A DNA stretch of 64,000 nt from Podarcis pityusensis. Its lineage: Eukaryota. The notes beneath the pieces were generated by a model that saw only the letters and a program-made list of their open reading frames with translations, had not been told where the DNA came from and did no database searches. Made by a program: the position numbers and the translations under genes. Location of the stretch: NCBI GenBank assembly GCA_964106645.2, contig OZ067039.1; one strand, written 5' to 3'. Each line of letters starts with the position of its first letter. Position 1 is the first letter of the stretch. Positions 29,441-64,000 of the stretch are shown piece by piece.

Positions 29441-32400
29441 AACATTATTATGCCATGAAACTCCAGGTGCCTTTCCTGAGCAGTCAGGTATATAAGCTCT
29501 ATCAGCAGACTCAGTTTAGAGGTGATTTGCAAGAATAATTATTTCCATGACTTAAAATAATAAGTTGGGAATTTGCCCTTAACACAATATATCTTTTTTT
29601 CAAATACATCTGGTACAGGTTTCTATCACGTTTAATATGATTGGTACATTGAGCCTGGTTTCAACTCTGGTTAAACTGCTGGTTTAAAGAAGAGCCTTGT
29701 ATGGGCATGCCAGCAGCTGGAACTAGGTTGTCCTTTTAGCTGAGCTATCACCATTACAGTAATTTAAGCTGATTTATGAAGCTTGCAAAATGTGTAAGTC
29801 TGCTCTGCCTGCACTTCTGCCTCCCTGTTCCTAGCCATTGTCATTCAAAGTAGAGTTCATGTTGAATTCAGTCAGCGCTGGCCTGAGATGGCCATGTAGG
29901 GTTATGCCCCATAGCTGGCAAACCACATCATCTGAAGTATCTGGTGAATACTCCAATGTCGGCAGCCTAACTAGCGTTTCTCTTTTCCTCTGCTTCCATT
30001 CTGTGTGCAGTACCTGCTTATGCCCATCAAATGAACCTTCCTGCTTTGCTCTGCTTCTGTTTTGGCTTTCTTCCATGTCCTGTTCTTCCCACTACAACCG
30101 TTTTCTTCCCCTTTAATGTAACCTTTTCCAGTGTTGTACTGGATTGATTGACCATTTCTGCAGCATGATTTTCTCCTTTGCTGTGGTTCTCCTTTTGGCA
30201 GACAGAGGCTGACAGGTTTGCATGATCAAGCTGTAGTGTAGCATGCAGGCTTCTTCGATTGAGAGCTTGAGCGGGGAGCGTGTTATAAGAATGGATTTCT
30301 CCTTTACAGGCTATTACTATATTTGGATGCAAGGGGGAGGTGTACAGTGTAGTAGGGTGTGATGGGGAGAATAGCAGCTAGATTTGCCATGCAGTATTTT
30401 CACAAGCATTAATGTTTCTGGGTTTCTGAGTTGGTATATTGATATCTAGGATTAAGAGAGTATACCCTTTATCCTGTTGGGTGCAGCATGATTGATAATC
30501 TTTTACTTTCTTCATGCCCATCTGCTTCCAGGCAGAATTCTCTGCTGCTCTCCAGAGGGTCCCCATCCAATGGGACCATGCTAGTCTGGACAGTTCAGTT
30601 GAAACTTTGGTTCATATGCTCACATTTCAAACTGCACATCACAGAAAGCACGTGCTTAACCCAAGAAGATTAAGCCCTTTTCTGTTTACAGAAGCATCCT
30701 GACTGTCCTTGTGTTGGAGGGTACCTTAGCTCCATTAAAGATGGCGAAACCAGAGAGAAGCTGGTGTCCTTTCATGATATCTGCCTCTCTTTCTCCTTAC
30801 TTCAACAAACGTGATTCTGCTACTGGTTCTGAAAACTCTTTCTTATGTTATAAAGAAGGGTATAAGAAGAAGTTCAAGACTTCATTAATGTGGAACCTGC
30901 AGCTCTCAGAGATAAACAAATCCCAAGTTACAGTTGAATTGGGGGGAAAGTGAAAGCTGCCACTTCTGTCTGTCTTACAACATATGAATAAGCCCCGAGA
31001 TTAATATATGCCACTCCTCTTGCATCAATCAGGAGAGGCATATCACATAGTTCAGACCCACTACCAGGGGCCAAGCAAGCACAGTTGCATTGTGCTAGAT
31101 ATGGCACACATGATTCAGATATAAGCCAGCCTGGTACAAAAACTCGTATCAGCCTAGATAATTGTGTGTGTGTCAAGGCAGCTGAAACGCACTTTTTTGG
31201 CAAACCATATTCCCAAATAGAATTACTCACTGCCAAACTGGTTTAGTCCCATGAGACTGACTGTATAAGAAACATTATGTTCCTAAGGAGGCAGGAGAAA
31301 ACAGCAATGAATTCTGTAGAGCAGGCGTACCCAACATGTTGCCCTCCATATGTTGCTGGACTTGAATTCCCATCTTATCTGACCATTAGCCAAGCCAGCT
31401 GGGCTGGTGGGAGTTTGAGTCAAACAGCATTTGGAGAGCACTGTGTTTGCTACCCCTGCTGTAGAGGCTTCTGGAACACATTTATAAATGGCAGAACTGC
31501 TACTTCTTTGCCAATAAACTTTGCAGTGTTTGTCCATCACAATACTCTTATTAAGGTATTATTTTCACTTTATAGGTTTCACTCCCTCCAGGGTTAAATT
31601 ATACTGCTTCATTGGTCACTGGCTTGCTTTTGTTAATAGAGATTCTTAAGCAACTTTAATCTACTGCCTGCAGTTTGCTATAGGCACAATCCTATCTGTG
31701 CTTGACAAATCAGAGTGTTCCCAATAGTAGGAAGCCCCAAACCACTGCTGTAAGAGCATGCAATAGAGAGCCATTGGAGAGATAAGACTGAATGTTTTAT
31801 AAGAGAGATAATTTTTTAAAAAACCAAGTGAAGCCAGAAGAAAACTTTTGAGATTGTAGCTCAGTTCACTTGTAAATGTCTGCTCGGTGTGGGACTTGGT
31901 GAAATGATGATTTTCTATCCAGAAAAATCTATGAAAATTATCATTTGCTTATAACTGCAGTCATTTTTGTTGTAGACATAATCCTGACTCACCCTTTTGG
32001 TATTTTGGCCCCTGGATCCCTTGCTCTTTCAGAACCCTAAGGTACTCATTTTAAAAAGTTGTAGTAAAAGAAACAGATACAAAATGTAATTTTAAATTAA
32101 AAGATTGTCCCTGATTCTTTAACTTATAAACAGAATATTGCCCAAAACTATCTACAGACATGGTGTACATATTTAGATGGCAGTCAAAAGTGTTTGACGG
32201 ATTTGAACTGCGGAGGCTTAAAATACTACAGTGATATGCACCTATGTCCAATCCAGAGTCCATTTATTTGAGAAGGTCTGTTCTGAGCATGACTAATGTT
32301 GAATATCAGCACATGTTCCAAGAAAACTTTGAAATGACATGGATCCTACCAGATGGGTTTTTAATGAGCTTAAGACCAATCTCTGTTTATTTTTGTAGTG

Positions 32401-35400: not shown

Positions 35401-36393
35401 GTAGACACAGGAAACCAGGTGAAATATGAAAGGTTATGGGAAGAATTGCAGTATCAAATAATTGTACACATTGTGCTGGAAAGATTAGATGTAACCATTC
35501 AGCTACTAACAGATGTTTCTAAAACCTGTGCAGCATGACTTCTGCTTGCCTGTGCTATTCCCAGGATACAGCAGTTTCTTGATCTAGGTGCCCTGAAGAG
35601 TCCCCTCTTTTAGATTTGTTCAAAAATGGATAGTTGCCCTTAGAAAGCTCTCTTCAGGCTTAGCAGAGACCTCTGTCTAAATATGCTTGTGCTAAGACCA
35701 AGCAGGAAGAAAGTTCTTGGTGCTATCTCACATCACACTCACTGCACAAGCCGCTGGGCAGAGAAACTAGGCTTTATCTTTAGTCCCAGAAGCAGGTTCT
35801 TTCTAAAAATGGATTTAATTTTAAACCACACATACTCTCCTTCCTGGTCCTAGGCCCAGATTAAGCCTGCAAACAACTTGCCAGTATAATATCCACACAG
35901 TCGTTGATCTGCCTACCAGGCAGGTCACTGATGCCTACCAATGTAACATGAATATGCCAGTTTATGGCTTATTCCCAGTCAACAGATGCCAACTGTTTTA
36001 ATATATGCATAGGCACCAACAGTCCAGTTTAACTTGCTGCATGGATCCTCATATGAGTGAAGCCTGGCCATCCTCTCAGAAAAACAGGGGAAGACCTATT
36101 CATTGTGCCCAGATAGAGCTATCCCCAGGATGGTACAGTTAAATGCTGTGGCTTCCACACAGATTTGAGAAGATGGGATTTTAGAACACCTTGGGAGTAC
36201 AGTAGGGCTAAGCTGACACCTCAGAAGTCAAGGTAACAACTGACTTTTTATTGGAACCACAGGCTGGTTTTCTAGCACCCCTGCCTTCAAGACAAGAAAC
36301 ATTGTGGGCTTGGGCTGCAAAGGAACCTAGCTTGAACCTGGAGCCCATGCACTGAAGCCTCTCTGCCTGACTTTTCCTCTCCTCTCCTCTCAG

Positions 36394-36544
36394 CATTGCA
36401 GCTTCCCTTAGCCAACGATGGAAGTAGCCGCTCCACCTCTTTGGACAGCTCGCCCCAGCATCATCACACTCATCCGTCACGCCCCCGAAACTTTCTGGGC
36501 CTGCCTCCTCAGCCCCCCTTCCACATGAACAAGAGCATGGAGAG
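36394..36544 (+). CDS. MAP2K7: MAP2K7 coding exon 3 (LQLPLANDGSSRSTSLDSSPQHHHTHPSRPRNFLGLPPQPPFHMNKSMES)
   Basis: Acceptor CTCAG|, donor GAG|GTAAGC; contains the D2 C-half (LQLPL) and D3 (RPRNFLGLP) JNK-docking motifs; 151 nt. Confidence 0.93.
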
Positions 36545-37416
36545 GTAAGCAGAACTAGAGCAAATGAGGCAGGTTCTGGTGTGCTGTGCTCATCTTCACT
36601 GCTGTATTGAGACCGGAGGGACCAACTTGTTTTGAGAAAGGGAAGCAGTTTGGAGCAAAAGTTTTATGTTGTGCTTGCCATTTGATCAGACAGGTCTGCG
36701 CACAAGACATGAAGCGTTTGCTGTCCTTGTGCCTGTACAGCCGTGGATAATAGCGTGTTGGGGAACTGAATGTTCTCTAGGCACTTTAATCTTGTTGCTT
36801 ATTGCTATTGCCACAGTCTTAACAGCTGCTTCACACTGTTCTTTTGATGTAAGAGGCAGAGCTTTTGAAAAGGGCTCCTGTCTCAAACCATCTTTGTTAG
36901 GTAGATATGGAACTTTCATAACCCCTAGTTGCCTTGAGTTGCATTTTTTTTTTTTTTGTAATATCATGTAATATCAGTAGCAGCCCATGCAAAGTTTAAA
37001 CTCTCCTGTTTGTGAATTAACGTGCTAAGTTTGTCTGCTAAATGAGTAATTTATAGCATGCACACAAAAATATACAGTAATGGCCCTGGGAGTTAGTAGA
37101 AGACCTGCTTTTTTGGGTTTCACCAGGTAATAAAAACTCATGATTTAACCTGCACTGTTCTGATCTGCAGATTGAGGTGTCTTGTTATGTAATTGACTTG
37201 TGAGTTGCTGGCTTTGAATTCATATTAGAAATTCTCTCATGATGGAGATCTACTAGTTCGTAGGGTTGTCTAGATGCCCTGGTTGAGAAGAGGAATGTGT
37301 GGTTCTCCATAGAGATGGAGTCCGTTTCTGCAGAGAGAAGGGTCTGAGATGTTCGTGTGCCATGGCTAAATGGAAGCAAACACAATATTTTTCCTTTTTT
37401 CTCTTTCCCTTTCTAG

Positions 37417-37483
37417 TATAGAGATTGATCAGAAACTGCAGGAAATTATGAAGCAAACGGGTTACTTGACCATCGGAGGGCAG
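37417..37483 (+). CDS. MAP2K7: MAP2K7 coding exon 4 (IEIDQKLQEIMKQTGYLTIGGQ)
   Basis: AG/GT boundaries, 67 nt, frame consistent. Confidence 0.96.
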
Positions 37484-37624
37484 GTGAGCTGACTTGAGAG
37501 GTGCAGCAGTTCGAAATATATTGAAGCCTGATGTATATTAAGAATTAACCAAAAGCAACTCCCCACCCTTTTCCATATAAAATGGATTGATGAGTAGCTT
37601 CTCTATGTGCTCATCTTCTCACAG

Positions 37625-37738
37625 AGATACCAAGCAGAAATCAATGACCTAGAAAATCTGGGTGAGATTGGAAGTGGGACGTGTGGACAGGTGTGGAAAA
37701 TGCGTTTCAAGAAGACTGGACACATCATAGCTGTGAAG
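37625..37738 (+). CDS. MAP2K7: MAP2K7 coding exon 5 (RYQAEINDLENLGEIGSGTCGQVWKMRFKKTGHIIAVK)
   Basis: Kinase Gly-loop and catalytic Lys; AG/GT; 114 nt. Confidence 0.97.
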
Positions 37739-38057
37739 GTGAGGTAGATCTACTGGGTGTTGAGTGGAAGATAGCTTAAGATGAAATGGCAGAGTTGGAC
37801 TTCTAGAGGGTTCATTGCTGGTGAAACTCTTAGGTGCCACAGATTATTTGGTTCCTGTGTCAGCTGTTGAGAGAGAATCCAGTTGGGCAGGATTAAGGGG
37901 GCCTTAACTTTCTTTGATGGAAAGTAGTGATGCTCTGTGAATTAATCATAAAACAGTTAAGGGCCATGAGGCCCTTTGTGGGTCAAAGCATTATCACCCG
38001 CGACTCTTTTGGCTCTTTCCACTTCTGCTCCTAATTTCCATTCTCTTCTCTGTTCAG

Positions 38058-38177
38058 CAAATGCGTCGTTCTGGTAACAAAGAGGAGAACAAGAGGATCC
38101 TGATGGACCTGGACGTGGTGCTGAAGAGTCATGACTGTCCTTACATTGTTCAGTGCTTTGGAACTTTCATCACAAAT
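38058..38177 (+). CDS. MAP2K7: MAP2K7 coding exon 6 (QMRRSGNKEENKRILMDLDVVLKSHDCPYIVQCFGTFITN)
   Basis: AG/GT; 120 nt. Confidence 0.97.
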
Positions 38178-38298
38178 GTAAATGAAGACGATGCTACTGT
38201 TTTCTCAAGTCCGTCTGTATTTTTCAATGTATTTAGAACAGCCACATCATAATAACCTTAACTTTTACTTTTTTTTTACTCCCCCCCCCATCCCTTAG

Positions 38299-38406
38299 AC
38301 TGATGTTTTTATAGCCATGGAGCTAATGGGCACATGTGCAGAGAAGCTGAAAAAACGAATCCAAGGGCCTATCCCTGAGAGGATCTTGGGAAAGATGACT
38401 GTGGCG
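38299..38406 (+). CDS. MAP2K7: MAP2K7 coding exon 7 (TDVFIAMELMGTCAEKLKKRIQGPIPERILGKMTVA)
   Basis: AG/GT; 108 nt. Confidence 0.97.
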
Positions 38407-38554
38407 GTGAGGTTTTTTCTTTTTACATTTAAATCTCACATTTCCCCCATCTAGACATTGGCCCAGTTCACATGTCATGCTAAACATGGAACGAATAGCA
38501 TGCTGGTATAGGCTACTTAATAGTACTCCTTCCTTGCTCCAGCTGTGGCAGATT

Positions 38555-38750
38555 CACAGATAAAACAAGCTATATATCTGGTCTGTCATGTCGCCTGGAC
38601 TTGGGCTCATGGCTTGTTTCCTCCAAACTGATGAGTGGTAACAAAGGTTTATTCTTGGGTTACCACTTGAGGGGTTTTTTTGTAGGAAACAAGCCATGAG
38701 TCCAGGTCCACACAACACGACAAGCTAGAACCTGGCTTGTTTTGTCTATG
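38555..38750. repeat. Degenerate foldback (palindromic MITE-like) element
   Basis: Nested inverted arms: AGATAAAACAAGC/GCTTGTTTTGTCT; GGACTTGGGCTCATGGCTTGTTTCCT/AGGAAACAAGCCATGAGTCCAGGTCC; AGTGGTAAC/GTTACCACT. Confidence 0.7.
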
Positions 38751-39636
38751 ACACAGGGGAGCCATTAGTTGCTTCCAGGTTTCCATGATCATGGCTTTTA
38801 AGGAGATACGTTGTGCTTCAAACTCCTTCCTGCATATGGCATCCAGGTATTATTCTTTTTTAGCTGCATTTTCTGCAGTTTTTGAAGGCACAACAACCAT
38901 TCTCCACTTGTTATTTGTTATTTTATATACCATTCTCCTCCATTTACTTAAGCCTCACACTTCTGTTTCTCTTTTGGCACACAAAAATGAGCTAAGCTTC
39001 CCTGCTTGGAGCAAAATGCTGTTGTGGACAGCAGAGGGAATAAGATTTTTTAAATAGTGACTGCACTGTTGGGCGGATTTTGGCAAAATTTGGAACCCAG
39101 GACTGGGCGTTCTGTTCTGCGTGGTTGTTTTGATTTCCTTTTGGCCATGCCCCCCCCCCCCTTGATGCTGCATAATGAGATGTGATAAAATCTAGGGCTC
39201 GGTTGAAGAGTCTGAAGTATTATCACACACTGAAAATATGAAGCCCAATATCTCACCTTAGGATTCCAAGAATAGTAACAGCATTTCAATAGCAACAACA
39301 GTTCATGAACACGCCACCTTTCTTTTCCCCCAGTGGTATCCCTGAAAACTGCTTGGTAATCTGCATGACTGAAGGGCTGTGCTGTAACGCTGTCTCCCCA
39401 CAAGTTGTTGTGTATACAAGACGTTTTGCCCCAGATAGCTGAAACTATCTTTTCCAAGTATCACGAAAGCCTCAGACTGATTGCTGAGTGCCTAACCTTT
39501 GTTCTCTAAGCAGCAACATGTTTTTACAGGCACGTTGATAAAAGGGTATCATGAGTTCTAGACTAGTTCTGAGTTGTTTTCCTTATAGTGAGCAACGATT
39601 AATTCTTCCGCATTGTTTCCGATGTGTTGCTTTCAG

Positions 39637-39816
39637 ATTGTCAAAGCGCTCTACTATCTGAAAGAGAAGCATGGTGTCATCCATAGAGATGTGAAGCCTT
39701 CAAATATCTTGTTGGATGAGAGGGGGCAAATCAAATTGTGTGACTTCGGGATCAGTGGGAGGCTGGTGGACTCGAAAGCCAAAACCCGGAGTGCTGGTTG
39801 TGCAGCATATATGGCG
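39637..39816 (+). CDS. MAP2K7: MAP2K7 coding exon 8 ([16 protein letters not shown] activation loop)
   Basis: [60 protein letters not shown]; AG/GT; 180 nt. Confidence 0.98.
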
Positions 39817-40617
39817 GTAAGAGATGGGCAGATGGCGAGAGAACAGCAGCAGGAATCTTGCTGTGCTGTGATGGAACTGAGCAAAAAAAAAAAAAAAAAA
39901 AAGGGACATTGTATGTTGCTCTTCCTACAAATTGCTCAGAATAGCTTGTGTATGATTTAATTAAATACTCTTTATTTGTTAAACTTTTATGTCATTCTTC
40001 CTCCAAGCTGCTTTGCATGGGTTGGGTATGATCCCTAGCAGTCTCTCATCCTAGCAGTGCTCTAGGCCAGACCCACTTCGTTGCAGCCGTTGAAATGCAC
40101 CATGTGTCACGATAACTTCTCTGCAGGACTAAGAATTCCATCGCTTGCATTTTACTGTAGAAAGTTGTCACTAGATTTGGCCTGAGCTTTTGGGAAACTG
40201 TATGGCAGCTATTATGCAGATGCTGTTACGGTATCAAAACAGCCTGCAATTTTGTCTTAGCAACATCCAGTGGGATTCAGCTAAGTTTTTGTGTGCACGG
40301 AACAAGGCCCACTCATGCAGTGAGACTCTCCCTCCTCTCCCCATGTACCCATGTGCTTCCCCCTAAATCTGCTCTGGAAGGTTGAGGGAACCCCCAGAAC
40401 AGGTTTAGGAGGATGGGGGAAGTCTTGTTGTGTGAGTGGCATTCATTCTGTGCACACCCACACCCACACCCACACCCACACCCACTTCGTGCTGCATTCA
40501 ATTCCACCCATGGTTTGGCTTCTGTAATTAGGGGAATCTTGCTAGGTGCAGATAAAGAGACCAGTGGCAAAGAGGTTTTATTTTTGACTGAATTTGTAAT
40601 AATCTTTTTGTTTCCAG

Positions 40618-40698
40618 CCTGAGAGAATAGATCCCCCTGATCCCTCAAAACCAGATTATGATATCCGTGCAGATGTTTGGAGCCTGGGCATCTCTCTG
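40618..40698 (+). CDS. MAP2K7: MAP2K7 coding exon 9 (PERIDPPDPSKPDYDIRADVWSLGISL)
   Basis: AG/GT; 81 nt. Confidence 0.97.
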
Positions 40699-41202
40699 GT
40701 AAGTAAAACCTGCTCCCCATTTTTAAGGAAATTTGTGTACCCTTGTTGGGATCTTCAGGTTCTGGATCATATCTCAACCATCCTTTAATGTATGCAGTCC
40801 TTAATACATGACATAAACAGCAATAAGCTTTGGGGTGAGTTTTTCTTCTCTTTTCTTCAGTTTTTTTAATGGAGTTAACTGATTCAAAGGAGGCTGAATT
40901 CTGGCTATCCTGAACCCCATTTTTGTCTCTACTATTGAGGCTGGATAAGCCAAGTGATCATTCTGTTCTACATTTCTTCCCTTTCTTGCTCTCGTCTCTT
41001 TCTGTACAATCATTTAGAATTGTGTTGTTTGTATGGACTTTTATCTATTTACTTTTGTTGTAACTGCCCTGTGGCTTATATGCAAATAGTGGCATATACA
41101 TCACTGAAGCATCATTGAAGAGATGCTGATGATAATAATGCTTTTTAGATTATTTCTGTTTTTAATCACTTATTTTTCATTTCTCTACCACCCCTAATGC
41201 AG

Positions 41203-41345
41203 GTTGAGCTGGCTACAGGTCAGTTCCCCTACAAGAACTGTAAAACAGATTTTGAAGTCCTCACCAAGGTGTTGCAGGAAGATCCTCCCCTTCTCCCAAA
41301 CAACATGGGATTTTCTGTGGATTTCCAGTCCTTTGTGAAAGACTG
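41203..41345 (+). CDS. MAP2K7: MAP2K7 coding exon 10 (VELATGQFPYKNCKTDFEVLTKVLQEDPPLLPNNMGFSVDFQSFVKDC)
   Basis: AG/GT; 143 nt. Confidence 0.97.
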
Positions 41346-42264
41346 GTGAGTGAAGTGCCTTAAATTCATGTTATGTAGAGCAGCTGCTTCAACATTTCTT
41401 ACATAGACAGGAAGCCCTGCAGTTCAGCTGGTTCCTCACTTTCCTGCTGAACTCTTGCACACCAGTTGCTTTCTCAGATATTGGCTAATGTTCATTCTAG
41501 GGCACCCCATCTTCAGTACTATTAATAGTGTATATAAAAGAATTGGAACTGTTCTGCTTGTTCAAACTGGTACCATGCTCTTCTAAAGACTGAACTCAAC
41601 CTGTGCTGGTGATTTCCACCTAGAAAGGAAATCCCATATCTGCCTCCAGGACAGCTGTGCTTAAATTCTGGGCTAGCACATCGTTGTGTATGACCTCTTC
41701 TTGTCTACACATTCCTGGCTCTTACCTCTTTTCTGTGTCTGATGTACCGGTTCTAAAGGTGTAAGAAGTCCTTCATTGCCACGGAAATAAAAAGTAACAT
41801 GTCATAAGTTAGTTACATTTCCCCATCTTTCCTTGTTTCCATTCCTTCCAACAATTAGGCAGCTGTAAATGAATTGCACTCCTTGCAACTGGCATTGACA
41901 CTTCCACAAATGTTCAAACAGAAAATCAACTTCTGATAGTGATTGTTTTGTTCCAGTTAACTTTGAGCTTATGTGTCCAACTTGCCACTCCTGGATTCCA
42001 TCAAACCACCCCACGTAAGATTGTTGCAAACTGCCATGGGATACTGGGCATAGGAAGTTGACCCTGAAAGATTATTGGTATGGCAGGATAATGGACTTCA
42101 TCCTGTTTGGCTGAGAGAGTTTGAAACTTAGAGTAGACCTATGTCAATATGAGCTCTGTTTGCAAGGATCCATTATGCATCAGGTAGCGGAAACATGCCG
42201 TGTTGGTTGCTCCATAAAATAAATTGGATCATGTGTTTTGAATGTGTGTTTCTGTTATTTCTAG

Positions 42265-42310
42265 CCTTACTAAAGATCACAGGAAGAGACCAAAGTACAA
42301 CAAGCTACTT
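42265..42310 (+). CDS. MAP2K7: MAP2K7 coding exon 11 (LTKDHRKRPKYNKLL)
   Basis: AG/GT; 46 nt. Confidence 0.96.
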
Positions 42311-42706
42311 GTAAGTATTGGTCACACCTCTTTCATTGTGAATATTTTAAAAAATCCCCCAGGGCTTGGAAAAAGGCCACAGTGGGTGCTTCTGCCAACC
42401 CTTAAAGTTTAGAAATAACCAGTAACATTTCTTGGAACTGGTTTGTGCCAACTGGCATGGAAGCTGAGATTAATAAAGTGACATCCTTTCTTTTCTCCAC
42501 ATAGTTTCTTTAAAGGAGAGGGAAAGTTCTTTTACTTTTTTATTTGACTTTGGTCAGATTTTTCCCTGCTCATGTTTGGTGCTGTTGTGTATCCTCCTTG
42601 TTGCTTAGCTATAGCTGACAACTGTTGCTCACAGCTCTGTAGAAATAACACAGGTGGTGTGACTCCCTTGCTTATTTTCCATCTCGTTTTGCCTGTTCCT
42701 TTGCAG

Positions 42707-42844
42707 GAACATAACTTCATCAAGCGTTATGAGACACTGGAAGTGGATGTGGCATCCTGGTTCAAAGATGTCATGGCTAAGACAGAGTCACCCCGCACGA
42801 GTAGCATCCTTAGCCAGCACCACCTGCCATTCTTCACCAGGTAG
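42707..42844 (+). CDS. MAP2K7: MAP2K7 last coding exon (EHNFIKRYETLEVDVASWFKDVMAKTESPRTSSILSQHHLPFFTR*)
   Basis: Acceptor TTGCAG|; TAG at 42842-42844. Spliced CDS is 1272 nt without exon 2 (423 aa). Confidence 0.96.
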   Translation, partial: EHNFIKRYETLEVDVASWFKDVMAKTESPRTSSILSQHHLPFFTR

Positions 42845-48800: not shown

Positions 48801-51681
48801 ATCTGGATGGCTAAATGTTTACAATCGCCTGCCTGACATCTGCTCTTAAAGTGTGTGGGGATATTGGGGTGGGTGGGGCACAGGTGTGCAGCGTGTGGTG
48901 CATGCAATTCAAATGGGGGATTTTAAAACAAACAAAACTGTAAAAAAAAAAATCATGCCAAAGGTAAGGCAGAGACTAGCTGGGTAGATGGTTATATTCT
49001 AGACATTAGCATTTCACTATATTCTCTATATACCATATATTATAAATTTGCATGTTAAAGTAAATAGAAGTAACCTCTATCTTATACAGAAAGGGACTTT
49101 AACTTTGGATTACTTGTAAATTTGGTCACTTGTCTTGATTCAGGACTGCCTGAACACCTTAAGCTTTAGGGGCTGCTTGATTTTGTTTTTGTATTTTGTT
49201 TTATTTTTGTAGCCACCAAACTTTTGCTTTGCTGCCTTTTCATTAAAAAGGGCATGATCCAAAGTTTCATAGAGGGTTTTGAGAGCAGAGCTACTGAGTG
49301 GTGGCAGCCAAATTGACTTGAGTTGCAGCCACCATAGAACTAGTAGCCAATTTGCTGTATCTTCTCCAATGCTGTATCTTCCTTTGCTGACCTGTTATAC
49401 TGAAATCGGCGTCATGGAAACACCTGGAAGCTTTGTATCACGGACATCCACCAGGACAATGCTGTACTCATGTGAGCAGTCAGAAGGTTTCAGACGGCCA
49501 GCAGTTTAGCTTTGCTTGCTCAACCAACCTCCCTCATGTTAGTTCCAAGTAATCAAAGCTACACTTTTGTGCACATTTATTTATTGCCCACAGGGAACTG
49601 TGTGTGTGTGTGTGTGTTTAATTTATTTTTTAAAACTTCCCTTTCTTTGACTTCTTATGGAGGGTGTATTTTTCATTTATAGTATTTGGTGAGTAGACTG
49701 TTTTCTCAAAGTGGAGGAATGGAGCATCACAAACAGATTTAATTTCAGGTTGCAGACCACAGTCCAAATTAATTCCAGTGCTTGATTCTTCTCTAAGAGA
49801 CTTGAAATGCTTGGGCTGTGGTTGGGCATGCGAAGTCTTGGAATCATATAACTTTAAAATTCCCAGGATTCAATATCATAAGGATAAGAGTCGGTGAAGT
49901 TGCTCATAGGTAATATTGGAAGAAGGACTGAGGCTGGAAATCAAGAGAATCATGATTATGCAGATTGACCAAACTCTGTGTTGAAGAATTCATGAAATTT
50001 GCTTTAAAATGATAATTAAGCTGATAAGTTGAATATTTATGCTTGCCTGCTGGCTTCAGAATTTTAATGTAGAACAAGTGCTAGTCAGTTACCTTTTAAG
50101 AATTTTTTTTCCTAATGTAGATCAAGCTGTTCTAGGTTACTCTCCAAACACCCGATTCACAAGAGTTGCAGTCAAAAACATGAGAATTTATAGCCCTGTA
50201 AAAGAGGAAGATTGACCAGGAGATGAGTTGGAGAACTTGCAGACACCCTGCCAATATTGAGTTTTATTCCCAAGTAGAGAGAAAATACTGTTCCTCTGTA
50301 GCTGTAGTGGATTTTGCCCAAATACAAGAACACAATATTTCAGGATGGTAGCATAGGAATTGGCATGCAACATGAACTGATGGGGGGTGCCTGTAGGTAG
50401 AGGATAGGGACTTAGGAGAGACAGTTCACATTACTTGTTTCTGTCACATCCTAGTTTTAGAGATGGTTTGCACACTCACACAGTGAAGTTTGGAGAAATG
50501 GTTATCTCAGAGAACTTTGGGATCAGGTCTGGAGAGAAGTCCTGTTTTGTTTATCCTGCTTAAGGGGAGCTTCTTAAAAACAACAAAATTGTCACCATAT
50601 ATATATACACTTACCTGTAGAGTGGTTCTTAATTTTTTAAAAAATAATAATTTGGCTCTAGTTTCACATTGGTGCTGTAAACCAAACCATTTTAAAAAGA
50701 AAGTAATGCTCTATATACCAAAGTATTTCAGCTATTTGTTTGGAAGTTTGTGGAGTTTTTAATAGCATAACCATCTCCTTCCTATCCCCACAGCAGGCCA
50801 TTTTATTAGTAGCTCTCCTTACTTACTTCCAGTTTAATGTCCGGTTAATGGACCCTCTTAATCTTGTTGGAGGGTTTTTTCCCACCAGCACCAGTTGTTC
50901 CCAGAGCCATTTGTCACAGGCAAGAAAAGGTTTAATGTGGCTTAGTATGCTAGATGTTATAATGACGTTCCGAAAGCATGGAAATGGCTTATCCCAGGGA
51001 TAACATGTTGAGTAAATTCCAATAAAGTAAGTACTGGAGTTTGTCTCAGAAGAGGAATGTTCTGATTTATGATTTGATTTTAAATGATTTCAGGCTTAGA
51101 GTGCCCTAGGCCCTCTGGCCAGTTTTGGAGGTGAGTGGATAATTTGCTGAGCTCCTTGCTTTCCCTACATGCTGAGAAATCAGAAATCGAGCAGTTGCCC
51201 TTTTTAAAATATCAGTTGTACCTTGGATTTTAAAAGATAATAAGAGAATAGTATCTCCCTGGGGTGTCTTCAAGAGTCTTTGTGAAACACTCTTTTCTGT
51301 GCCCTATGGGACCCAACCTTGTAGGTTCAGTCCAGCAACATAGGACAGTTCAGTGTCACTTATTTCCAGTTATGGTTTGCTAGTCACCTCTCAGTGCGAT
51401 TTCACTGTCCTAAATTTCACTGCCCACTGCTTGGCATGCACCAAATTTTAGAACAGAGACTTTCCTTTTCCTAGTCAACACCCCACCTCCCCGTCAGCAG
51501 TCCAAACAGCTTGTCAGAAGTAGTTGCCTGCCTCCAAGCAGCGAGGCCAGTCTGATCAATTTTAGTGGAACTTTTGGATTTAGAAACATACCTACAATAG
51601 TATAAGGTAAATGACATTCTTGCTTACTTTTGAAAAGCTTTTTTTTTACTCTGTTTGTAAAAACCCTCATAGAAGCTTAAA

Positions 51682-51687
51682 AATAAA
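51682..51687 (+). terminator. Candidate distal MAP2K7 polyadenylation signal
   Basis: AATAAA with upstream TGTA (51656-51659) and U-rich context, and downstream U/GU-rich TGTCTGTTTCTTT. Confidence 0.4.
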
Positions 51688-53332
51688 ACTCTCTTTCCCT
51701 AAATGTCTGTTTCTTTCCATTTCATGCACAGTTTTAAAGCAGCTTCCTTCCCCAGAATGAACTTCTAAGTCATGAATCATTTTGTACTTGGAATCAACAA
51801 GAAAGGCATCCTGGCAACCTTAAGGGACTCCATCATGATTTTAAATGGGTGGAGAACCTGAGGCTAAGGGGACTCAGCGCAGCTCTCCAGGTCTCTCTCT
51901 TTAGCCTTTGGGACTCCCCCCAGTCCACACACACTCTGGCCCAGCTTCTCATCCTCCTCTACTAGTTTTTGACTGTCTGAAATGTGTCCTTGAATTCTTA
52001 TAGCTCCTCTTGCATGAATGAAGGACAGAGAGGGGCTGCATATATATGTGGAAGCTAGCCTACTGTCCAAAGGTAAAGTTCACATTTGTTGTTCCACCCA
52101 CATTTTGCCTCTGCCCATTGTCTCTGCTGCCCATCCCCAGAGGTCGCCCAGGAGGGAATGATGTGACCCATAGGCTAATAAAGGCTTCCCACTCCTGATC
52201 TAAAAGATTGATATTTCAGAGGTAGGAAGTGCTGAGAGATCTGACAAACTTGAAGCTTGGAATAAGTAAGTAGTATTAATTATTAAAATTTCTATACTGT
52301 CCTTCACCCAAGGATCACAGGACAGTTTACAATATGAGAAAACAAAATGTGTAACGTAACAAGCAGAAGAGAGTAGCAAGTGGTGAATGCATTAATTTGA
52401 GCAATATCTGTTTTGTCATTCAAAGAAGAAGGGTAACTGATAATTTGAAGATGGAGGGGAAATCATATTTGGTCTTTGGGCTGTACAGAGGCCTCCAAGC
52501 AGTTTACAGTTAAAACTAACGTAGCAGTTTCTGGGTGCAACGTTAAATCATGCAAATTGACTATTGGAACGTAATGTGCTGAATACATTTGCCACATGTC
52601 ATCTGTCGTAAACTTGGGAAACGGTGACCTGTTGGCCTGTCCCCTGCATTTGTTTAACATGTAGAGTACAAATGCTAAAATTGTCATAGAGGTGAGACTC
52701 AACTTACATGGGAGTTATGTTCTGGGGATGAATCAAGCCAGAATCATGGATAGTCCATTTGCCTTACCTGGAGACAGCTGAAAATTGCTGAGGCGAACAG
52801 TGATGCAGCAGAAGAACCACTCACAAAATGGAAGCAGAGTTTGATAATTACTGGTGATGGTTTTTACTGATACCTAATCCATGTTAGAAAATTGACTAAA
52901 TTCTTTGCTGAAGCATTTTTTCTGCGACTAGGAGCTCATCTTTCCTCAAGTTCAGTACATTTGCTTTGGAGGTTTTGTGACTCAGCCTGCCCATTTTAGG
53001 CAGAATTTGCTGAATCAGAATCAAAATGCAGAAAGCTTATTCTTTTATATCTTCCCCTCCCCACCTCCACATTCTTCTCAAAAGTATTTTTACCCTTCTC
53101 CTATAATTTCTTCCCCCATCCTTCTTCAGCTTTCTTTTCAAACCAGCCAGTTATTTCATTTCTCCTATCTGGGCCTTTTACATTTGCTACGTCTTCCTAT
53201 CACAGCCTTCCTCTCTTATCCTTTTTCTTTTCTGTTCTTGACTTGGAGTCAAATCCCTGCTCAGCTGTGAAGCTCACTTAGAACCCTTTCAAGAAGGACT
53301 GGTTTCTCAGCTTTACCTACTGCACCGGGTGC

Positions 53333-57369: not shown

Positions 57370-57720
57370 CTGTGGCCTTGGATGAATCACCTGGGTTACG
57401 TTTATCCCTCCCTGCGTCAGGCTTGTTCGTTTTTTTCCAGAAGGCCTTGGAGTCTGCCAGAGCATTCTGGGAAAGATGAACATCTTGTAAACAGGCAGCC
57501 TGTGGCCTTGGAGCTGCGTGCAGCCCTCTCTGCCTAATTTCTACCCAGGTGCTTGGCAGGCAGGTAGAAAGAGAGGCCTGCTCCTCCTGCTTTTTGGGTT
57601 CTGTCCTGTCCATCTGACAGGATCTCTTGCAAAGGAGTAGCGGCACTTGACAGGCAATGATACCTTCCCTGCCTGCTGGTATAAAAGGGCGAGTTACCTC
57701 AGGCCTCCTTGTCGCGACTG
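57370..57720 (+). promoter_or_regulatory. Putative TGFBR3L promoter: TATA box with NR5A1 (SF-1) motifs
   Basis: TATAAAAG at 57680-57687; TGGCCTTGG (reverse complement CCAAGGCCA, NR5A consensus) at 57373-57381 and 57503-57511; near-match AGGCCTTGG at 57442-57450. Confidence 0.5.
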
Positions 57721-58503
57721 GAACTCCTCTGCTTCCCTGTTGCCTCTTCTCTGTCCCCTGGTTAGTGATCTGTTAAAGCCAGGACAGATACCAGGAACGT
57801 CTCCTTCCTGGCCCTACCTCACTGGGGTGGTAGGCAGGTCACGCTGACCCAGATTTCAGCATAGCATACCTGCCGGTGCCTCTCAGGAAGTCTCCTCCTC
57901 TGCCTGCGTTAATCATAAATCCACCCCAATCTCCTTGGTAACCCAAGCGGGGGCTTGCCTTGTGTTTCTCACTCTGTGGGACATCCTTCGGGGTGAAGGT
58001 CGCTTGCTTGATGGCTCCCTGCTTGAGGGGGGGGAGCCATCTCCCCGCTACAGGGAGGGGGTGATGAACCTGCCACTCGCACGGTGAGTTCCTGGGATCT
58101 GACAAGGGAGGAGAGACAGACAGACACACAAAGAGAGGGAAAGGGAGCGGATGCTTCTTCTTGTAAGTCTCTGCTTTCTTAATACCTTTCCTCCACTGCT
58201 GAATTCCCTTAGAAATAAACAGCTTGCCACATAAACCATGCCCTCCTCCCCTCTCACTTGTAACTTGACCCTCCTTGTGGGCCTAGAGTTATTTTTAACC
58301 TCCCATTGACCCGCATAACTTTTTTATTATTGTTGTTCATTAAACTATGCCAGTCTGGAGATAGGAGGCCTTGAATTGGCTCACGGTTTCTGCATCCCCT
58401 GGATTAAGCGCTGCGAGTCCTCCCACTTGCTTCCTGTCCTTCAGTTCAGGTAGCACTTTATCCAACCTCCTCCTCCTCTATTTTTCTCCTAACCTGCATC
58501 TAG

Positions 58504-58537
58504 ATCCACTGGCAGTGGGAGAGCTCTGCTGGGCAAG
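58504..58537 (+). other. Candidate small 5'UTR exon of TGFBR3L
   Basis: Branch-like CTAAC (58489), acceptor CTAG|, perfect donor AAG|GTAAGT. A candidate first-exon donor ACG|GTGAGT lies upstream at 58084. Confidence 0.45.
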
Positions 58538-59730
58538 GTAAGTGTTCCTCTGGCATTCCCTCTCCACATTCGGGAGCTTGGCTTGCTGGGAGGTGGAACA
58601 CGTCCTGGAAACTTTTAATTACAGCCAGTCTAATCCTGTAACACTGAATCTTGCTGTCTCAATGCATCCTTCTTTTAAAACAGAGCCATAAAGGTGGGAG
58701 GGAAGTTTTTGTGGGAAACTTGAGACAGGAGGGAAGAACGCCTTTTTGACTGACAGAAGTTGGGACCAGAAGGTGAGGGAGAGTAAGTTGCCTTCAGAGA
58801 AAGATTGCAGATCGAGTCTATAGAACTGAAGAAGCAAGTGTTGGGCAAAATCCTTCTGGCTAGAGACAGATCATCACAGTGGATAATACTGAGCAAAGTG
58901 GACCGATGATCTGGATTAGGCTCACACATCTTCCCATTTTCAAGGAGTAGAAGCTATTAGATAGTAAACAATTTGGAATCAGGGTAAGCTCTGGGGTCCC
59001 CAATGTGTCATTCATGATCATCATAGTGCCCTCCTCTTGGTGCCAGCCAAGATCCCCTGACCCCATTTTTTTAAAGAAATTGAGGCTTTTTGTGATGAGG
59101 AGAGTGGGGTTTTTTTGCGGGGGAGACATTGCCTGCTTTTTGTGTCACTTTTATTTCTTTTGAGTGGGTAGGTGTTTAGTCTGGTTTCTGGGGATGAGGG
59201 AGGGGTGTCTGAGCATCACCCATTTTTCTTCAGTGAAACGGGTATTCTTAGATTTCTGACTGTGCTCAGATTGAAAAGGTTGGAGACCTGGCTATATGCT
59301 ATACCCTTTCACTTTGTGGTGTTAATCGGAAGGGTGGCCACCACCTTCCCCTCTGCTTACAATTGCAGAAGCACCCACTGCACCAAAATGAAGTCCTTCC
59401 ACCACCCCATCCTGCTATGATTGCGCATATGACAGGATAGTTGAAGGAATGTATAATCCGTATTAAGGGACACTGAGTATGGTCTGTATGCTTGTTTCTG
59501 TAGCAGATAGATCAGGAACGGAGAGAGGAAATGTTGAAGTTCTGTCCCAAAATCCAAACCACAAATTGACTGGTATGAGGTCAATTGAGGGCTGGAAAGT
59601 GTTTCCAAGTAGCTCAGAGGTCGTGCGACGGCATTCCCTTCAACTCCTGTGCTTTCTTGCCCTGGCTTTGCTTTCTTTCCTAGGGTGGAACAAGAGGGAA
59701 ATCACAGGTTTTCTTTGGGTTCTGAACACC

Positions 59731-59815
59731 ATGCATAGAAACTGCCTGCATATCGATCACCTATGGAGACAGTACCTCCTCCTGCTGCTTGTCGTCTGGG
59801 GGTGCTCTGGGACAG
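59731..59815 (+). CDS. TGFBR3L: TGFBR3L first coding exon, signal peptide (MHRNCLHIDHLWRQYLLLLLVVWGCSGT)
   Basis: Exon acceptor TTTCCTAG| at 59683; ACCATG context; hydrophobic core plus small-residue cleavage region. The phase-1 donor CAG|GTAAAG joins the next exon in frame. Confidence 0.75.
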
Positions 59816-60180
59816 GTAAAGTCTAACAGAGCGGCTATTGTAAACATTTAAATGGGCTGCACAATAATTATCCACACCAAAGGTGTAAAACGTTTTGCTA
59901 AAACAAAACAAAACAAAAACATTATTGTAGGGGAGCTGTCCAGGATACATTGCTGTATGTATCCTGAAGTGTACATGTAAAAAAGAAATTAGCAGTCTTA
60001 AAATACATTTTTCTTTGAAACCTTGAATGTAGAGCAGGTCTTTCAACTTTGCTAAATAGACATGTGTGCGCTCACACAGAGCCATTTGGACTTGTCAAAT
60101 TTTCTTCCCTTGCAGCAGAATAGATAGATGAAGTTGTCAGAGTATAAATGTATTCAATGGGGTTTTATACTAGGGGTTTC

Positions 60181-60564
60181 AGGGACGTGGGTGGTGCTGT
60201 GGTCTAAACCACTGAGCCTATTGAGCTTGCCGATCGCAAGATTGGCCGTTCAAATTCACACAATGGGGTGAGCTCCCATTGCTCTGTTCTGGCTCCTGTC
60301 AACCTAGCAGTTCGAAAGCATGCCAGTGCAAGTAGATAAATAGGTACTGGTGCGGCGGGAAGGTAAATGGCATTTCCATGTGCTCTGGTTTCTGTCACAG
60401 TGTTCCATTGTGCCAGAAACAGTTTAGTCATGCTGGTCACATGACACAGAAAAGCTGTCTGCGGACAAACGCCAGCTCCCTCAGCCTGAAAGCAGAGATG
60501 AGCGCTGCACCCCAAAGTCAAATTCGACTGGATTTAACCATTCATGGGTCCTTTACCTTTACCT
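60181..60564 (+). mobile_element. Sauria SINE, full length
   Basis: GGGACGTGGGTGGTGCTGTGGTCTAAACCACTGAGCC head, AGTAGATAAATAGGTAC core, (ACCTTT)n tail; 13-bp TSD TACTAGGGGTTTC (60168-60180 / 60565-60577). Confidence 0.92.
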
Positions 60565-61078
60565 TACTAGGGGTTTCCCAATTCTGCATGATGCTTCTGA
60601 TGCCCCTTTGTCCTGCTTCTCTTTATTGGATGTACCTTCAGTGAGCAGCTTGGATTTACAGAGTGTCCTTCATTCTGTACCTGCTTATTTTTCACAGGAT
60701 GCAATTTCAGTTCCTTGATAACCAAGTGCACACAGCTAAGGGCACTTTTAATCTCCAGCTCGGCACTCAGTATTTGTTTTTGACATTGATTACCATAGGG
60801 CAGGTAGATGCTGCCTGTGGGTTGTTTATAGCACAGAGGCTGTTAAGCTATCTGCTGAATTCATAGCCAGCCGACCATGGTTGCTTCCTATAAAGAGAAG
60901 AGCCCAGGCTTCCAAAGTTGACCAGGAGTCATAGTTTCTGTTCTGAATGGTGAGGGGAAGGCACTCTGCACTTGCTGTAAGGTACTTCTGCTGTTTCTTC
61001 ACATTCCCAAATTGGGGGGAAAACATCCACGTTGAACATTCCTGCAACTGTACTTTGGTATCTGGTACAGCTCTCTGT

Positions 61079-61433
61079 GGGATGTGGGTGGCACTGTGGG
61101 TTAAACCACAGAGCCTAGGACTTGCCGATCTGAAGGTTGGCAGTTCAAATCCCTGCAACGGGGTGGCTCCCGTTGCTTGGTTCCTGCTCCTGCCAACCTA
61201 GCAGTTTGAAAGCACATCAAAGTGCAAGTAGATAAATAGGTACTGCTCTGGCGGGAAGGTAAACTGCGTTTCCATGCGCTGCTCTGGTTCGCCAGAAGCG
61301 GCTTAGTCATGCTAGCCACATGACCCGGAAGCTGTACGCCGGCTCCCTCGGCCAATAAAGCGAGATGAGAGCCGAAACCCCAGAGTCCGCCACGACTGGA
61401 CCTAATGGTCAGGGGTCCCTTTACCTTTACCTT
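61079..61433 (+). mobile_element. Sauria SINE, full length (different subfamily body)
   Basis: Same head, core and tail; 13-bp TSD TACAGCTCTCTGT (61066-61078 / 61434-61446). Confidence 0.92.
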
Positions 61434-61984
61434 TACAGCTCTCTGTTCCTTTCTCATGGTGCCAGAGCATATTCTTTCACATGGAATGTTAAGGCAAGTT
61501 GAGTTGGTAGAATCCTCATGTGCTAAATGGAATTGTACCATTTCAGGCTGCAGATGGTGTGTGTGTGTGTCTTTTTTAAACCCCTCCCCCCTAAAGCTGT
61601 CTGTGTGTAAAATTCTAGTACACTGAGGAGAAAGAATTAGCTCCCTGGGGCAACTTAATAACTCTGCCCAGAAGCATAGGCAGAAACGAGAGAGCTCAGG
61701 CCAGGCAGCTCCTGAGGTTGCCCTGAGAATATTTGGTAGCTTTTGTTCCTTCCAGTATTTTAAATTGAAAATTGCCTTGGTAGAAAGGCAACAAACCAGC
61801 CCAGCCTGCTCCCTACTGTGTTAGCTTTCCTATTACAAGGAACTTTTTACGTTGTAGTCTCAGAATAGTATATAGTCTGGTCTGCCACCACATTCTCACT
61901 CCGTCTTATTGTTGTGTATGTAATGTGTAGCCCCCGTGCAGGGCTAGCAGCTTCCCTGTAATTATTTAATTCGTAAAATGAATG

Positions 61985-62105
61985 GTCAGTGGTTAGAGCA
62001 CCTGCTTTGCATGAAGTAGGTCCCAGCTTCATTTCCCAGCATCTTCAGGTAGGACTGAGGTTGTCCCTAGAGAGCTGCAGCCAGTCAGTGCAAAAGACAA
62101 TGCTC
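61985..62105 (+). mobile_element. tRNA-derived SINE fragment (Squam3-like)
   Basis: TCAGTGGTTAGAGCACCTGCTTTGCATGAAG...CAGCATCTTCAGGTAGG...GCTGCAGCCAGTCAGTG. Confidence 0.5.
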
Positions 62106-62801
62106 TCATCTTCATAATGAAAACAGACTCTAAATAATAATTCTCTTTAATAGGGTTGAGTGCCAAACATGACCACTGAAAAACAAGAGGAGTGCCATCA
62201 ACATGCCCAGGAGAAACGGGGGGGGGGGGATGGAACTAAAAGGGAGGAACCCCCCCCCAAAAAAACCCCACTTTCCCACCCAGCAAAGGCTCTACATGCT
62301 GAGTATCCTTTGGAAAAGGAATTTAAAGGGAAGGAGGAGACTGAGCCCCTTACAGTTTATAGTATCTTGGTGGAGGGAATAGCTGACTGAAAAAGAAACA
62401 CTTTTTTCCCTTGTACAACTTGTACAATCTAAAAATAAGCCAGTAAGCCATTGTTAGGAGCAATTCACAGTGACCCTCCCCCCTCAGTGTGGGGACCATG
62501 AAATGCACACCAATCCATTTCTGTCCCATCATACCAGTTCCCCCAGAGTTTCCTTGTTTTATTTTTCCCTTCATCATCCTCAGTCATTGGCCAGATATTC
62601 CATATTTTTTGTTTCTCAAATACAGAATGAATTATAAAAAAAAAAAAAAAGGAAAAAAAGTTAAGCTGGTGTATCATTTTGAGCTCAGGCACCTGAGCAC
62701 TTTGTGTTTTGGGAGAAAGGGGATGCCAAATGTACAGAGTTTTGGAAACTACTTTTCTGAAACCCCATTTCTTCCAGCATTGCTCTTCTCCTCCCCTGCA
62801 G

Positions 62802-62974
62802 CCACCTGGCACCATCTTGCTTGCCTCCCCATGTCTGCCTCTACCCCACATCCCGTCCTCGGCTTCTGGGAATCACTGCGAAAAGGCACCGGATGCACCA
62901 GCCGGGGCCGCTCTACCCTGGGGCAAGAAGTCCATGTCATCAGCCTGAAGAAGGGATTGCCGGCAAATGGCCAG
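62802..62974 (+). CDS. TGFBR3L: TGFBR3L coding exon 2, betaglycan orphan-domain start (ATWHHLACLPMSASTPHPVLGFWESLRKGTGCTSRGRSTLGQEVHVISLKKGLPANGQ)
   Basis: Aligns to TGFBR3 CELSPVSASHPVQALMESFTVLSGCASRGTTGLPQEVHVLNLR; phase 1 in, phase 0 out. An alternative in-frame acceptor lies at 62777. Confidence 0.85.
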
Positions 62975-63398
62975 GTATGGGAGATCCCCATCCATACCAC
63001 CTTCCCATGTATGAGGCTGTATGATGGGTCTTGCTACAGCTCCATTGGATACCCAAACAAGATGGCCGTTCAGCTTGGCACTACAGTTCAAGGTGTCTCA
63101 GTCAGTCAAAAAGGCAAAACTCCATTTCAGTCACTTCTTCACAGTTGTCAGGGCCTCTCTTAAGTCACAGAAGCGTTAGGTTAGCCAAGTTGTGAGAAGC
63201 AAAGAGGAACACTCTTGCGCAGGGCCTGCTTAGTGCTGGGGGTGGGAACATGCCTCACCTGCTGAACATCCAAGGGGTAAGTTGCTAGGCCGCCTTTGGT
63301 GGTATATCCTACCTTCTCTGGTTCTTTTCCAATCCCTTCTCCATTTCGCTCTTTGATCATGCATGGAGAAGGTACCTGTCCCCTTGATCCTCTTTCAG

Positions 63399-63518
63399 GT
63401 AACTCTGATAACTCTGGACCCAGATCCCCACGACAGAGGCCCCATCTTTGTGCTGTATTCCCGGAAGCCTGTGCATTGGGTGTTGCTGTCTCCCCCTGGA
63501 AAAAACTGGACCTTCCAG
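63399..63518 (+). CDS. TGFBR3L: TGFBR3L coding exon 3 (VTLITLDPDPHDRGPIFVLYSRKPVHWVLLSPPGKNWTFQ)
   Basis: Aligns to TGFBR3 VTLHLNP...VVFLLNSPHPLVWHL; TTTCAG| and CAG|GTGAGA; 120 nt. Confidence 0.85.
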
Positions 63519-63737
63519 GTGAGATGGGATAGAGGGCCAAAGGGCCTAGAGAACATCATGGGGATCACTGAGGGGGTCGTTGGAGTCCCTGCTCTATGCA
63601 AGCATAGAAGATGAGTGGCAGCTATGGGAAGGGTGGATGGAAAAGCTAATTTGCTACCTCCACAGCACTTTTACAAAATACTTTCAGATCTAGCTCTGTT
63701 TGTCTTCAGAAGCATCTTGTGTAGTAAGTTCCTATTC

Positions 63738-63850
63738 TTCCCATTTTACAGATGGGGGAAATTGAGGCTGAGGGAGGCTTGCCTAAGGCCACCCAGTGAG
63801 TCTGTGGCTGAGGTGGAACTTGAACCCAGATCTCCCAGATTAAAGTGCAG
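63738..63850 (-). mobile_element. MIR/CORE-SINE fragment
   Basis: CCCATTTTACAGATGGGGGAAATTGAGGCT...TTGCCTAAGGCCAC...GAACTTGAACCCAG. Confidence 0.7.
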
Positions 63851-63949
63851 AACTGTTCAACTTTAATGCACTCCCCAGCGTGGGGTGTCAGAGAGGGGGG
63901 AGGTTCTCCAGGCTAGTATATTTTACCTTTGCCTTCCTCCTATCTACAG

Positions 63950-64000
63950 GTCTCCCCTGGCTCTAATGTTTCAGCCCCAGGGCCAGTGGCTTCTGCTGAG
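63950..64000 (+). CDS. TGFBR3L: TGFBR3L coding exon 4, 3'-partial (VSPGSNVSAPGPVASAE)
   Basis: Acceptor TCTACAG|; matches TGFBR3 VSEGSVV at the equivalent exon start; runs off the window. Confidence 0.75.

What the first reader, a model, noticed from the sequence alone, without database searches (positions are those of the whole stretch)
59731..64000. TGFBR3L-position gene retains the betaglycan N-terminal orphan domain
Seen: four spliceable exons (85, 173, 120 and >51 nt; phases 1, 0, 0) encoding a signal peptide plus ...CLPMSASTPHPVLGFWES...GCTSRG...QEVHVISL | VTL...IFVLYSRKPVHWVL...F | VSPGS. They match TGFBR3/betaglycan in sequence and, as I recall them, in intron positions. Known: the gene after MAP2K7 in mammals is TGFBR3L, a short ZP-C-type inhibin B co-receptor of gonadotropes that lacks the orphan domain; betaglycan's orphan domain binds TGF-beta. 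Inference: this lizard keeps an ancestral full-length second betaglycan, which could have a broader ligand range than mammalian TGFBR3L.
Basis: partly seen in the sequence, partly recalled or inferred. Interest (0 to 1): 0.8.

Follow-up and report, generated by a model that had tools for sequence, protein, structure and literature searches.

The report
Lizard fertility co-receptor keeps extra domain
Lizards, snakes and turtles keep a long form of the hormone co-receptor TGFBR3L, with a large extra domain that mammals lost. The domain is kept by selection but lacks the residues its known relative uses to bind TGF-beta, so its partner is unknown.

Summary
The four exons are real (85, 173, 120, 51+ nt; phases 1, 0, 0; GT-AG). 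They match public Podarcis 'TGFBR3-like' models (one residue off P. lilfordi). The gene follows MAP2K7, where NCBI names TGFBR3L in Pogona. Over 20 squamates and about 15 turtles keep the betaglycan-type orphan domain, under purifying selection (dN/dS 0.15-0.30 in squamates). Squamates lack two ZP-N exons and carry orphan domain, disordered linker, ZP-C and TM; alligator (in DNA) and axolotl (in its model) keep ZP-N but lack the orphan domain. Broader TGF-beta binding is not supported: zebrafish betaglycan's binding loop, F250, D253 and L210, and the ZP-C contacts, are replaced. New here: a perfect oestrogen-response palindrome upstream, conserved in squamates and turtles. Published Pogona data show the gene rising about 9-fold in differentiating ovaries with aromatase and inhibin alpha. 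Best reading: an inhibin co-receptor with a conserved domain of unknown ligand. The models are already in RefSeq; no paper found describes the architecture. Not done: tree with mammalian TGFBR3L, TGFBR3 and endoglin; RNA reads. The scan had not noted this on other DNA.

The parts
59731..59815 (+). Coding exon 1: signal peptide, 85 nt, phase-1 donor
   Evidence: 28/28 to P. lilfordi model
62802..62974 (+). Coding exon 2: start of orphan domain, two Cys, QEVHVI strand; Leu at about 62876-62878 aligns with zebrafish betaglycan F49
63399..63518 (+). Coding exon 3: orphan subdomain OD2 strands, phase 0-0
63950..64000 (+). Start of coding exon 4 (cut by window end)
57837..57849 (.). Perfect oestrogen-response-element palindrome GGTCAnnnTGACC, about 1.9 kb before the ATG
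   Evidence: 1 found, 0.08 expected; same place in 5 squamates and 2 turtles with 0-2 mismatches
57901..57922 (.). Conserved 22-bp AT-rich non-coding element beside the palindrome (binding factor unknown)
   Evidence: identical in four squamates, one mismatch in Elgaria and Trachemys
57747..58688 (+). Conserved upstream block, probable promoter and untranslated exons (inferred; TATA-like box at 57680)
   Evidence: 68% identity over 1 kb to Tiliqua; start site not tested
57373..57511 (-). Two NR5A1/SF-1-type sites (57373-57381, 57503-57511); weak, Podarcis only
   Evidence: 4 in window, 4 expected by chance
51557..51719 (+). Conserved element with AATAAA, probable end of the MAP2K7 3' UTR; used as synteny anchor
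   Evidence: found upstream of the gene in skink, turtle (inside its kinase gene range) and alligator
16105..42844 (+). MAP2K7 coding span (upstream neighbour)
   Evidence: N-terminus, kinase exon, C-terminus recognised from knowledge of MKK7

Best explanation
This is the Podarcis ortholog of TGFBR3L, an old duplicate of betaglycan. It encodes a single-pass membrane protein of about 765-780 aa: signal peptide, two-lobed orphan domain, a disordered linker of about 110 aa where turtles have ZP-N, ZP-C, TM helix and short tail. It most likely works as mammalian TGFBR3L does: ZP-C holds an inhibin while the inhibin beta subunit occupies the activin type II receptor, damping activin signalling, in pituitary gonadotropes and also in the differentiating gonad, possibly under oestrogen control. 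The orphan domain is folded and maintained but probably does not bind TGF-beta in the betaglycan manner; it is more likely an accessory surface (avidity, selectivity or a second partner). Shown: exons, architecture in relatives, selection, residue changes, upstream palindrome. From a paper: gonadal expression in Pogona. Inferred: ligand, mechanism, oestrogen control, orthology by tree.
For: Position: MAP2K7 upstream, EVI5L-type gene downstream in five squamates and alligator; NCBI gene order MAP2K7-TGFBR3L-EVI5L in Pogona. Several relatives carry the TGFBR3L product name. About 28-34% identity to betaglycan in both orphan domain and ZP-C, with near-equal scores to human, rat and zebrafish orphan domains, fits an old whole-gene duplicate. 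ZP-C is the only domain kept in every lineage. dN/dS of the orphan domain 0.15-0.30, as low as ZP-C. [quoted passage not shown] Pogona log2FC 3.1 from stage 6 to 12 in both female types, with aromatase and INHA (PMC8049264).
Against: No tree with mammalian TGFBR3L, TGFBR3 or endoglin could be built. No RNA reads were laid, so splicing rests on public models. The inhibin B contact residues of TGFBR3L are unknown, so their conservation is untested. Pituitary expression in reptiles is untested. The Pogona counts were probably made on a shorter 470-aa model that holds only the end of the orphan domain. Loop alignments and the model's loop (pLDDT under 50) are uncertain.
Confidence: 0.62

Rival explanations
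1. Dual co-receptor with a new partner: ZP-C binds inhibin while the orphan domain binds a different TGF-beta-family ligand (a BMP, GDF, AMH or activin-class protein) through its own surface, acting in gonad differentiation.
For: Orphan domain is as constrained as ZP-C with many invariant positions across turtles and squamates. Betaglycan and endoglin use different surfaces of this fold for different ligands (PMC11865472). Gonadal up-regulation.
Against: No binding data; no ligand sequence was available to model a complex. The domain was dropped in alligator, mammals and apparently axolotl, so it is dispensable. Constraint may reflect folding alone.
Confidence: 0.2
2. One reading: a second betaglycan that binds TGF-beta through orphan domain and ZP-C and hands it to TGFBR2.
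For: Same fold, closer to betaglycan (Z 16-17) than endoglin (Z 11.7). L208 kept as Leu in 22 of 28; F49 and L213 changes are conservative.
Against: Binding loop replaced and of variable length; F250 never aromatic, D253 is His/Arg/Gln, L210 is Pro/Ser in 26 of 28; ZP-C N82 is His or Gly and the hydrophobic FG helix is gone. Each of these mutations abolishes binding in betaglycan. ZP-N is absent in squamates.
Confidence: 0.09
3. The orphan domain was regained in the reptile stem by duplication or exon shuffling from TGFBR3, or the gene is a reptile-specific TGFBR3 copy and not the TGFBR3L ortholog.
For: The domain was found only in turtles and lepidosaurs; exons 2-7 form a phase 1-1 module that can move cleanly. 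No long form from fish or amphibians was retrieved.
Against: Orphan domain scores no better against mammalian than zebrafish betaglycan in the turtle (145-148 bits each) and only slightly in Podarcis; divergence equals that of ZP-C. Gene order and NCBI naming point to TGFBR3L. A tgfbr3l gene is named in catfish (PMC12003874).
Confidence: 0.06
4. The exons are decaying relics or are not spliced to the ZP-C exons.
For: No RNA evidence obtained here; some annotations give short 311-470 aa models.
Against: Open frames, conserved exon sizes and splice sites in seven genomes; dN/dS intervals all below 0.6 for the orphan domain.
Confidence: 0.03

Closest known systems
Mammalian TGFBR3L (inhibin B co-receptor; PMC8673766)
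   Same: Locus after MAP2K7; ZP-C, TM and short tail; lack of betaglycan's TGF-beta contacts; no ZP-N.
   Different: Reptile form adds a 330-aa orphan domain and a linker (about 770 vs about 290 aa); expressed in embryonic gonad in Pogona, whereas the mammalian gene is described as gonadotrope-restricted.
Betaglycan / TGFBR3 (PMC11865472; PDB 9b9f, 9fdy, 8dc0)
   Same: Orphan-domain fold with two lobes and matching Cys; ZP-C; best hit by sequence (E=1.6e-55) and structure.
   Different: Only about 30% identical; binding loop, F250, D253, L210, N82 and FG helix replaced; ZP-N lost in squamates; tail unrelated.
Endoglin (PDB 5hzw, 5i04)
   Same: Shares the orphan-domain fold (Z 11.7).
   Different: No sequence hit by phmmer or profile; 18-21% identity in structural alignment.
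RefSeq 'TGF-beta receptor type 3-like' models of squamates and turtles
   Same: Same gene; Podarcis models match the window's exons almost exactly and carry Pfam PF26060 plus PF00100.
   Different: Computational models only; naming is inconsistent (TGFBR3, TGFBR3L, or MAP2K7 isoforms in two turtles); no paper found on their architecture or ligand.

Membership tests
TGFBR3L orthologs | Position directly after MAP2K7 in the LRRC8E/EVI5L neighbourhood | tested here: met
TGFBR3L orthologs | ZP-C domain followed by TM helix and short tail | tested here: met
   in congener models and AlphaFold model; beyond the window end, so not in this genome's DNA
TGFBR3L orthologs | One clade with mammalian TGFBR3L to the exclusion of TGFBR3 and endoglin | not testable with these tools
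   three homolog searches returned no mammalian TGFBR3L, TGFBR3 or endoglin sequence; the tree holds reptiles and axolotl only
TGFBR3L orthologs | Ectodomain made of ZP-C alone (mammalian definition) | tested here: not met
   orphan domain present
TGFBR3L orthologs | Binds inhibin B, not inhibin A or TGF-beta2 | not testable with these tools
   needs binding assays
TGFBR3L orthologs | Gonadotrope expression through two SF-1 sites and an EGR1 site | tested here: inconclusive
   two SF-1-type sites, not above chance and not conserved beyond Podarcis; no pituitary data
Betaglycan (TGFBR3) | Orphan domain with OD1 and OD2 | tested here: met
   (Z 17; 2.2 A over 123 residues for one lobe; lobe orientation not reproduced)
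Betaglycan (TGFBR3) | ZP-N domain carrying glycosaminoglycan sites | tested here: not met
   absent in squamates, present in turtles
Betaglycan (TGFBR3) | TGF-beta contact residues in orphan domain and ZP-C | tested here: not met
Betaglycan (TGFBR3) | Ortholog-level similarity | tested here: not met
   about 30% identity, near-equal to mammal and fish
Betaglycan (TGFBR3) | Shared intron positions | not tested
   no TGFBR3 genomic sequence in session; agreement is from memory
Endoglin | Sequence similarity to endoglin above betaglycan | tested here: not met

The most novel reading that the evidence does not exclude
Reptile TGFBR3L is a third functional type of type III co-receptor: its orphan domain binds a TGF-beta-family ligand that neither betaglycan nor endoglin binds, and the gene is a direct oestrogen target linking aromatase activity to inhibin/activin signalling during reptile ovary differentiation.
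Probability: 0.15. Interest if true: 0.8.

Novelty: new variant of a known kind. Interest (0 to 1): 0.52.

Why it matters
TGFBR3L is discussed as a fertility drug target, and why it picks inhibin B is stated as an open question (PMC8673766). A natural deletion series now exists: turtle (all domains), squamate (no ZP-N), alligator and axolotl (no orphan domain), mammal (ZP-C only). It shows the mammalian receptor is a stripped-down betaglycan twin and allows direct tests of when TGF-beta binding was lost and what each domain adds. The conserved orphan domain without known contacts is a candidate for a third binding mode. The oestrogen-type palindrome and ovarian up-regulation suggest a role in reptile gonad development that has not been examined.

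Tried and rejected
Pfam scans of single exons found nothing; the local Pfam copy does not report the orphan-domain family, which appeared only in precomputed hits. Two targeted homolog searches meant to fetch TGFBR3 and mammalian TGFBR3L returned only reptiles and axolotl, so the family tree was not built. An apparent orphan-domain remnant in alligator (L003 8536) was rejected: similar hits lie on both strands and it sits upstream of the signal-peptide exon. An ENA fragment hoped to be a spliced transcript reads into an intron. SF-1-type sites are not above chance. Turtle models named MAP2K7 contain no kinase motif, so they are naming artefacts, not fusion proteins. The spliced model was searched exon by exon by reference; the joined step was left out, and public Podarcis models stood in for the whole protein. 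Two structural papers (PMC6726503, PMC6920675) were not held.
Full report
Observation. Exon 2 alone finds betaglycan orphan-domain structures and nothing else significant in the PDB (E=1e-6). Upstream on the same strand lie an LRRC8E-like gene, a second LRRC8-like frame and MAP2K7 (names from my knowledge of these proteins). The window holds no N.

Identity. Exon 2 searched against 1.8 billion representatives gave snake, monitor, skink and turtle proteins named TGF-beta receptor type 3-like. A search with a turtle protein gave 46 clusters, all turtles and squamates. The window's exons are one residue off Podarcis lilfordi models and two off P. raffonei, so the genome is a Podarcis and the gene is already modelled in public annotation. 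The P. muralis locus is collinear with the window to its last base and continues through a dozen more intact exons.

Orthology. An EVI5L-type gene follows this gene in Podarcis, skink, alligator lizard, boa, gecko and alligator. A kinase gene precedes it in the turtle. A poly(A)-bearing element at about 51.6 kb is shared upstream in skink, turtle and alligator. NCBI's Pogona annotation lists MAP2K7, TGFBR3L, EVI5L as consecutive genes (PMC8049264 supplement). Identity to betaglycan is about 30% in both orphan domain and ZP-C, with near-equal scores to human, rat and zebrafish. Endoglin is not hit by sequence and ranks lower by structure (Z 11.7 against 16-17). From my own knowledge, TGFBR3, TGFBR3L and endoglin each sit near LRRC8 paralogs, which fits early vertebrate genome duplication; this was not tested. 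I could not fetch mammalian TGFBR3L, TGFBR3 or endoglin sequences, so orthology rests on gene order, naming and distance, not on a tree. The tree of reptile and axolotl ZP-C regions recovers turtles, squamates, geckos, snakes and lacertoids as groups.

Architecture. Turtles have 16 coding exons with orphan domain, ZP-N, ZP-C and TM. Squamates lack turtle exons 9 and 10, exon 8 has become a longer, fast-changing linker, and profile searches find no ZP-N remnant in five squamate loci. The AlphaFold model of the P. raffonei protein shows two beta-sandwich lobes, about 110 low-confidence residues, ZP-C and a TM helix. The partial tuatara model also runs from the end of the orphan domain to ZP-C without ZP-N. 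Alligator is the reverse: a signal-peptide exon lies 326 nt before the exon-8 homolog, in compatible phase 1, and ZP-N exons follow, so exons 2-7 are gone. The axolotl model has signal peptide, ZP-N and ZP-C; its DNA could not be read, so hidden exons are not excluded. Mammals have ZP-C only (PMC8673766; a 292-aa Atlas cluster). If the full form is ancestral, the orphan domain was lost about three times and ZP-N twice. ZP-C is the constant.

Selection. Pairwise dN/dS for the orphan domain is 0.15-0.30 among five squamates, against 0.16-0.43 for ZP-C and 0.32-0.72 for the linker; it is 0.42 between two turtles (Nei-Gojobori counts, pairs not independent). The domain is therefore not a relic.

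Ligand. The betaglycan-TGF-beta structures name the essential residues (PMC11865472). In 28 reptile orphan domains the binding loop is replaced by a Gly/Pro-rich loop of variable length; F250 is never aromatic; D253 is His, Arg or Gln; L210 is Pro or Ser in 26; F49 is mostly Leu or Ile; L213 is Phe; only L208 is mostly kept. In ZP-C, N82 is His or Gly and the hydrophobic FG-helix residues are absent. The same paper shows N82 and I161 changes spare inhibin A binding, so these losses fit an inhibin receptor that ignores TGF-beta, like mouse TGFBR3L. The register inside the loop is uncertain, but it is anchored by conserved strands on both sides.

Regulation. A perfect GGTCAnnnTGACC palindrome lies at 57837-57849, the only one in the window (0.08 expected). 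It is at the same place in P. muralis, skink, boa and gecko (exact), alligator lizard and slider (one mismatch) and pig-nosed turtle (two), beside a conserved 22-bp element; alligator has an exact one 720 bp before its ATG. That this is an oestrogen receptor site is inferred from the consensus. In Pogona embryonic gonads the gene rises by log2FC 3.1 between stages 6 and 12 in both ZW and sex-reversed ZZ females, as aromatase and inhibin alpha rise. No males were compared there, and the counts probably used a shorter model. No paper held links TGFBR3L to such an element.

Mechanism and verdict. Most likely this is an inhibin co-receptor that works through ZP-C, with a folded, conserved orphan domain whose partner is not TGF-beta as betaglycan binds it (0.62). 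A second ligand for the orphan domain is the main rival (0.2). Literature searches found no description of the long form, though the library lacks most subscription journals. It is a new variant of a known kind, already present in database models.

Limits. The spliced model was searched exon by exon and the joined step left out. Everything beyond exon 4 comes from congeners. No human contig was met.

Noticed in passing
L004 about 16320-16355 and the same place in L001, L005, L007: Two in-frame splice acceptors 15 nt apart at the start of exon 6, exactly at the position of betaglycan's TGF-beta binding loop; public models use one or the other, giving a loop with or without five residues.
   Followed up: partly
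L004 15158-15175: Lacertid and amphisbaenian models extend exon 4 by five codons through a downstream donor; the same extra codons are open in skink DNA.
   Followed up: no
L003 8724-9680 (alligator): The RefSeq alligator model (325 aa) misses a signal-peptide exon and two ZP-N exons that lie upstream in frame; the real protein is probably longer.
   Followed up: yes
P0024, P0025, P0029, P0087 (Chelonia, Mauremys): TGFBR3L proteins are named MAP2K7 isoforms in RefSeq but contain no kinase motif, which suggests merged gene models or read-through transcripts.
   Followed up: partly
window 42844-51720: MAP2K7 seems to have a 3' UTR of up to about 9 kb with blocks conserved in skink, ending near an AATAAA element conserved to alligator.
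   Followed up: partly
window 58084 and 58538: Two strong GT donors inside the conserved upstream block, candidates for untranslated first exons.
   Followed up: no
window 60181-60562 and 61064-61434: Two copies of a short interspersed repeat (Sauria-SINE-like, from memory) in intron 1, about 75% alike.
   Followed up: no
window 10876-12117: A second LRRC8-like frame that stops after the pore region; the scan has already followed it up.
   Followed up: no
P0071 against other squamates: Lacertid ZP-C and TM regions have diverged faster than in other squamates (branch 0.31; higher dN).
   Followed up: no
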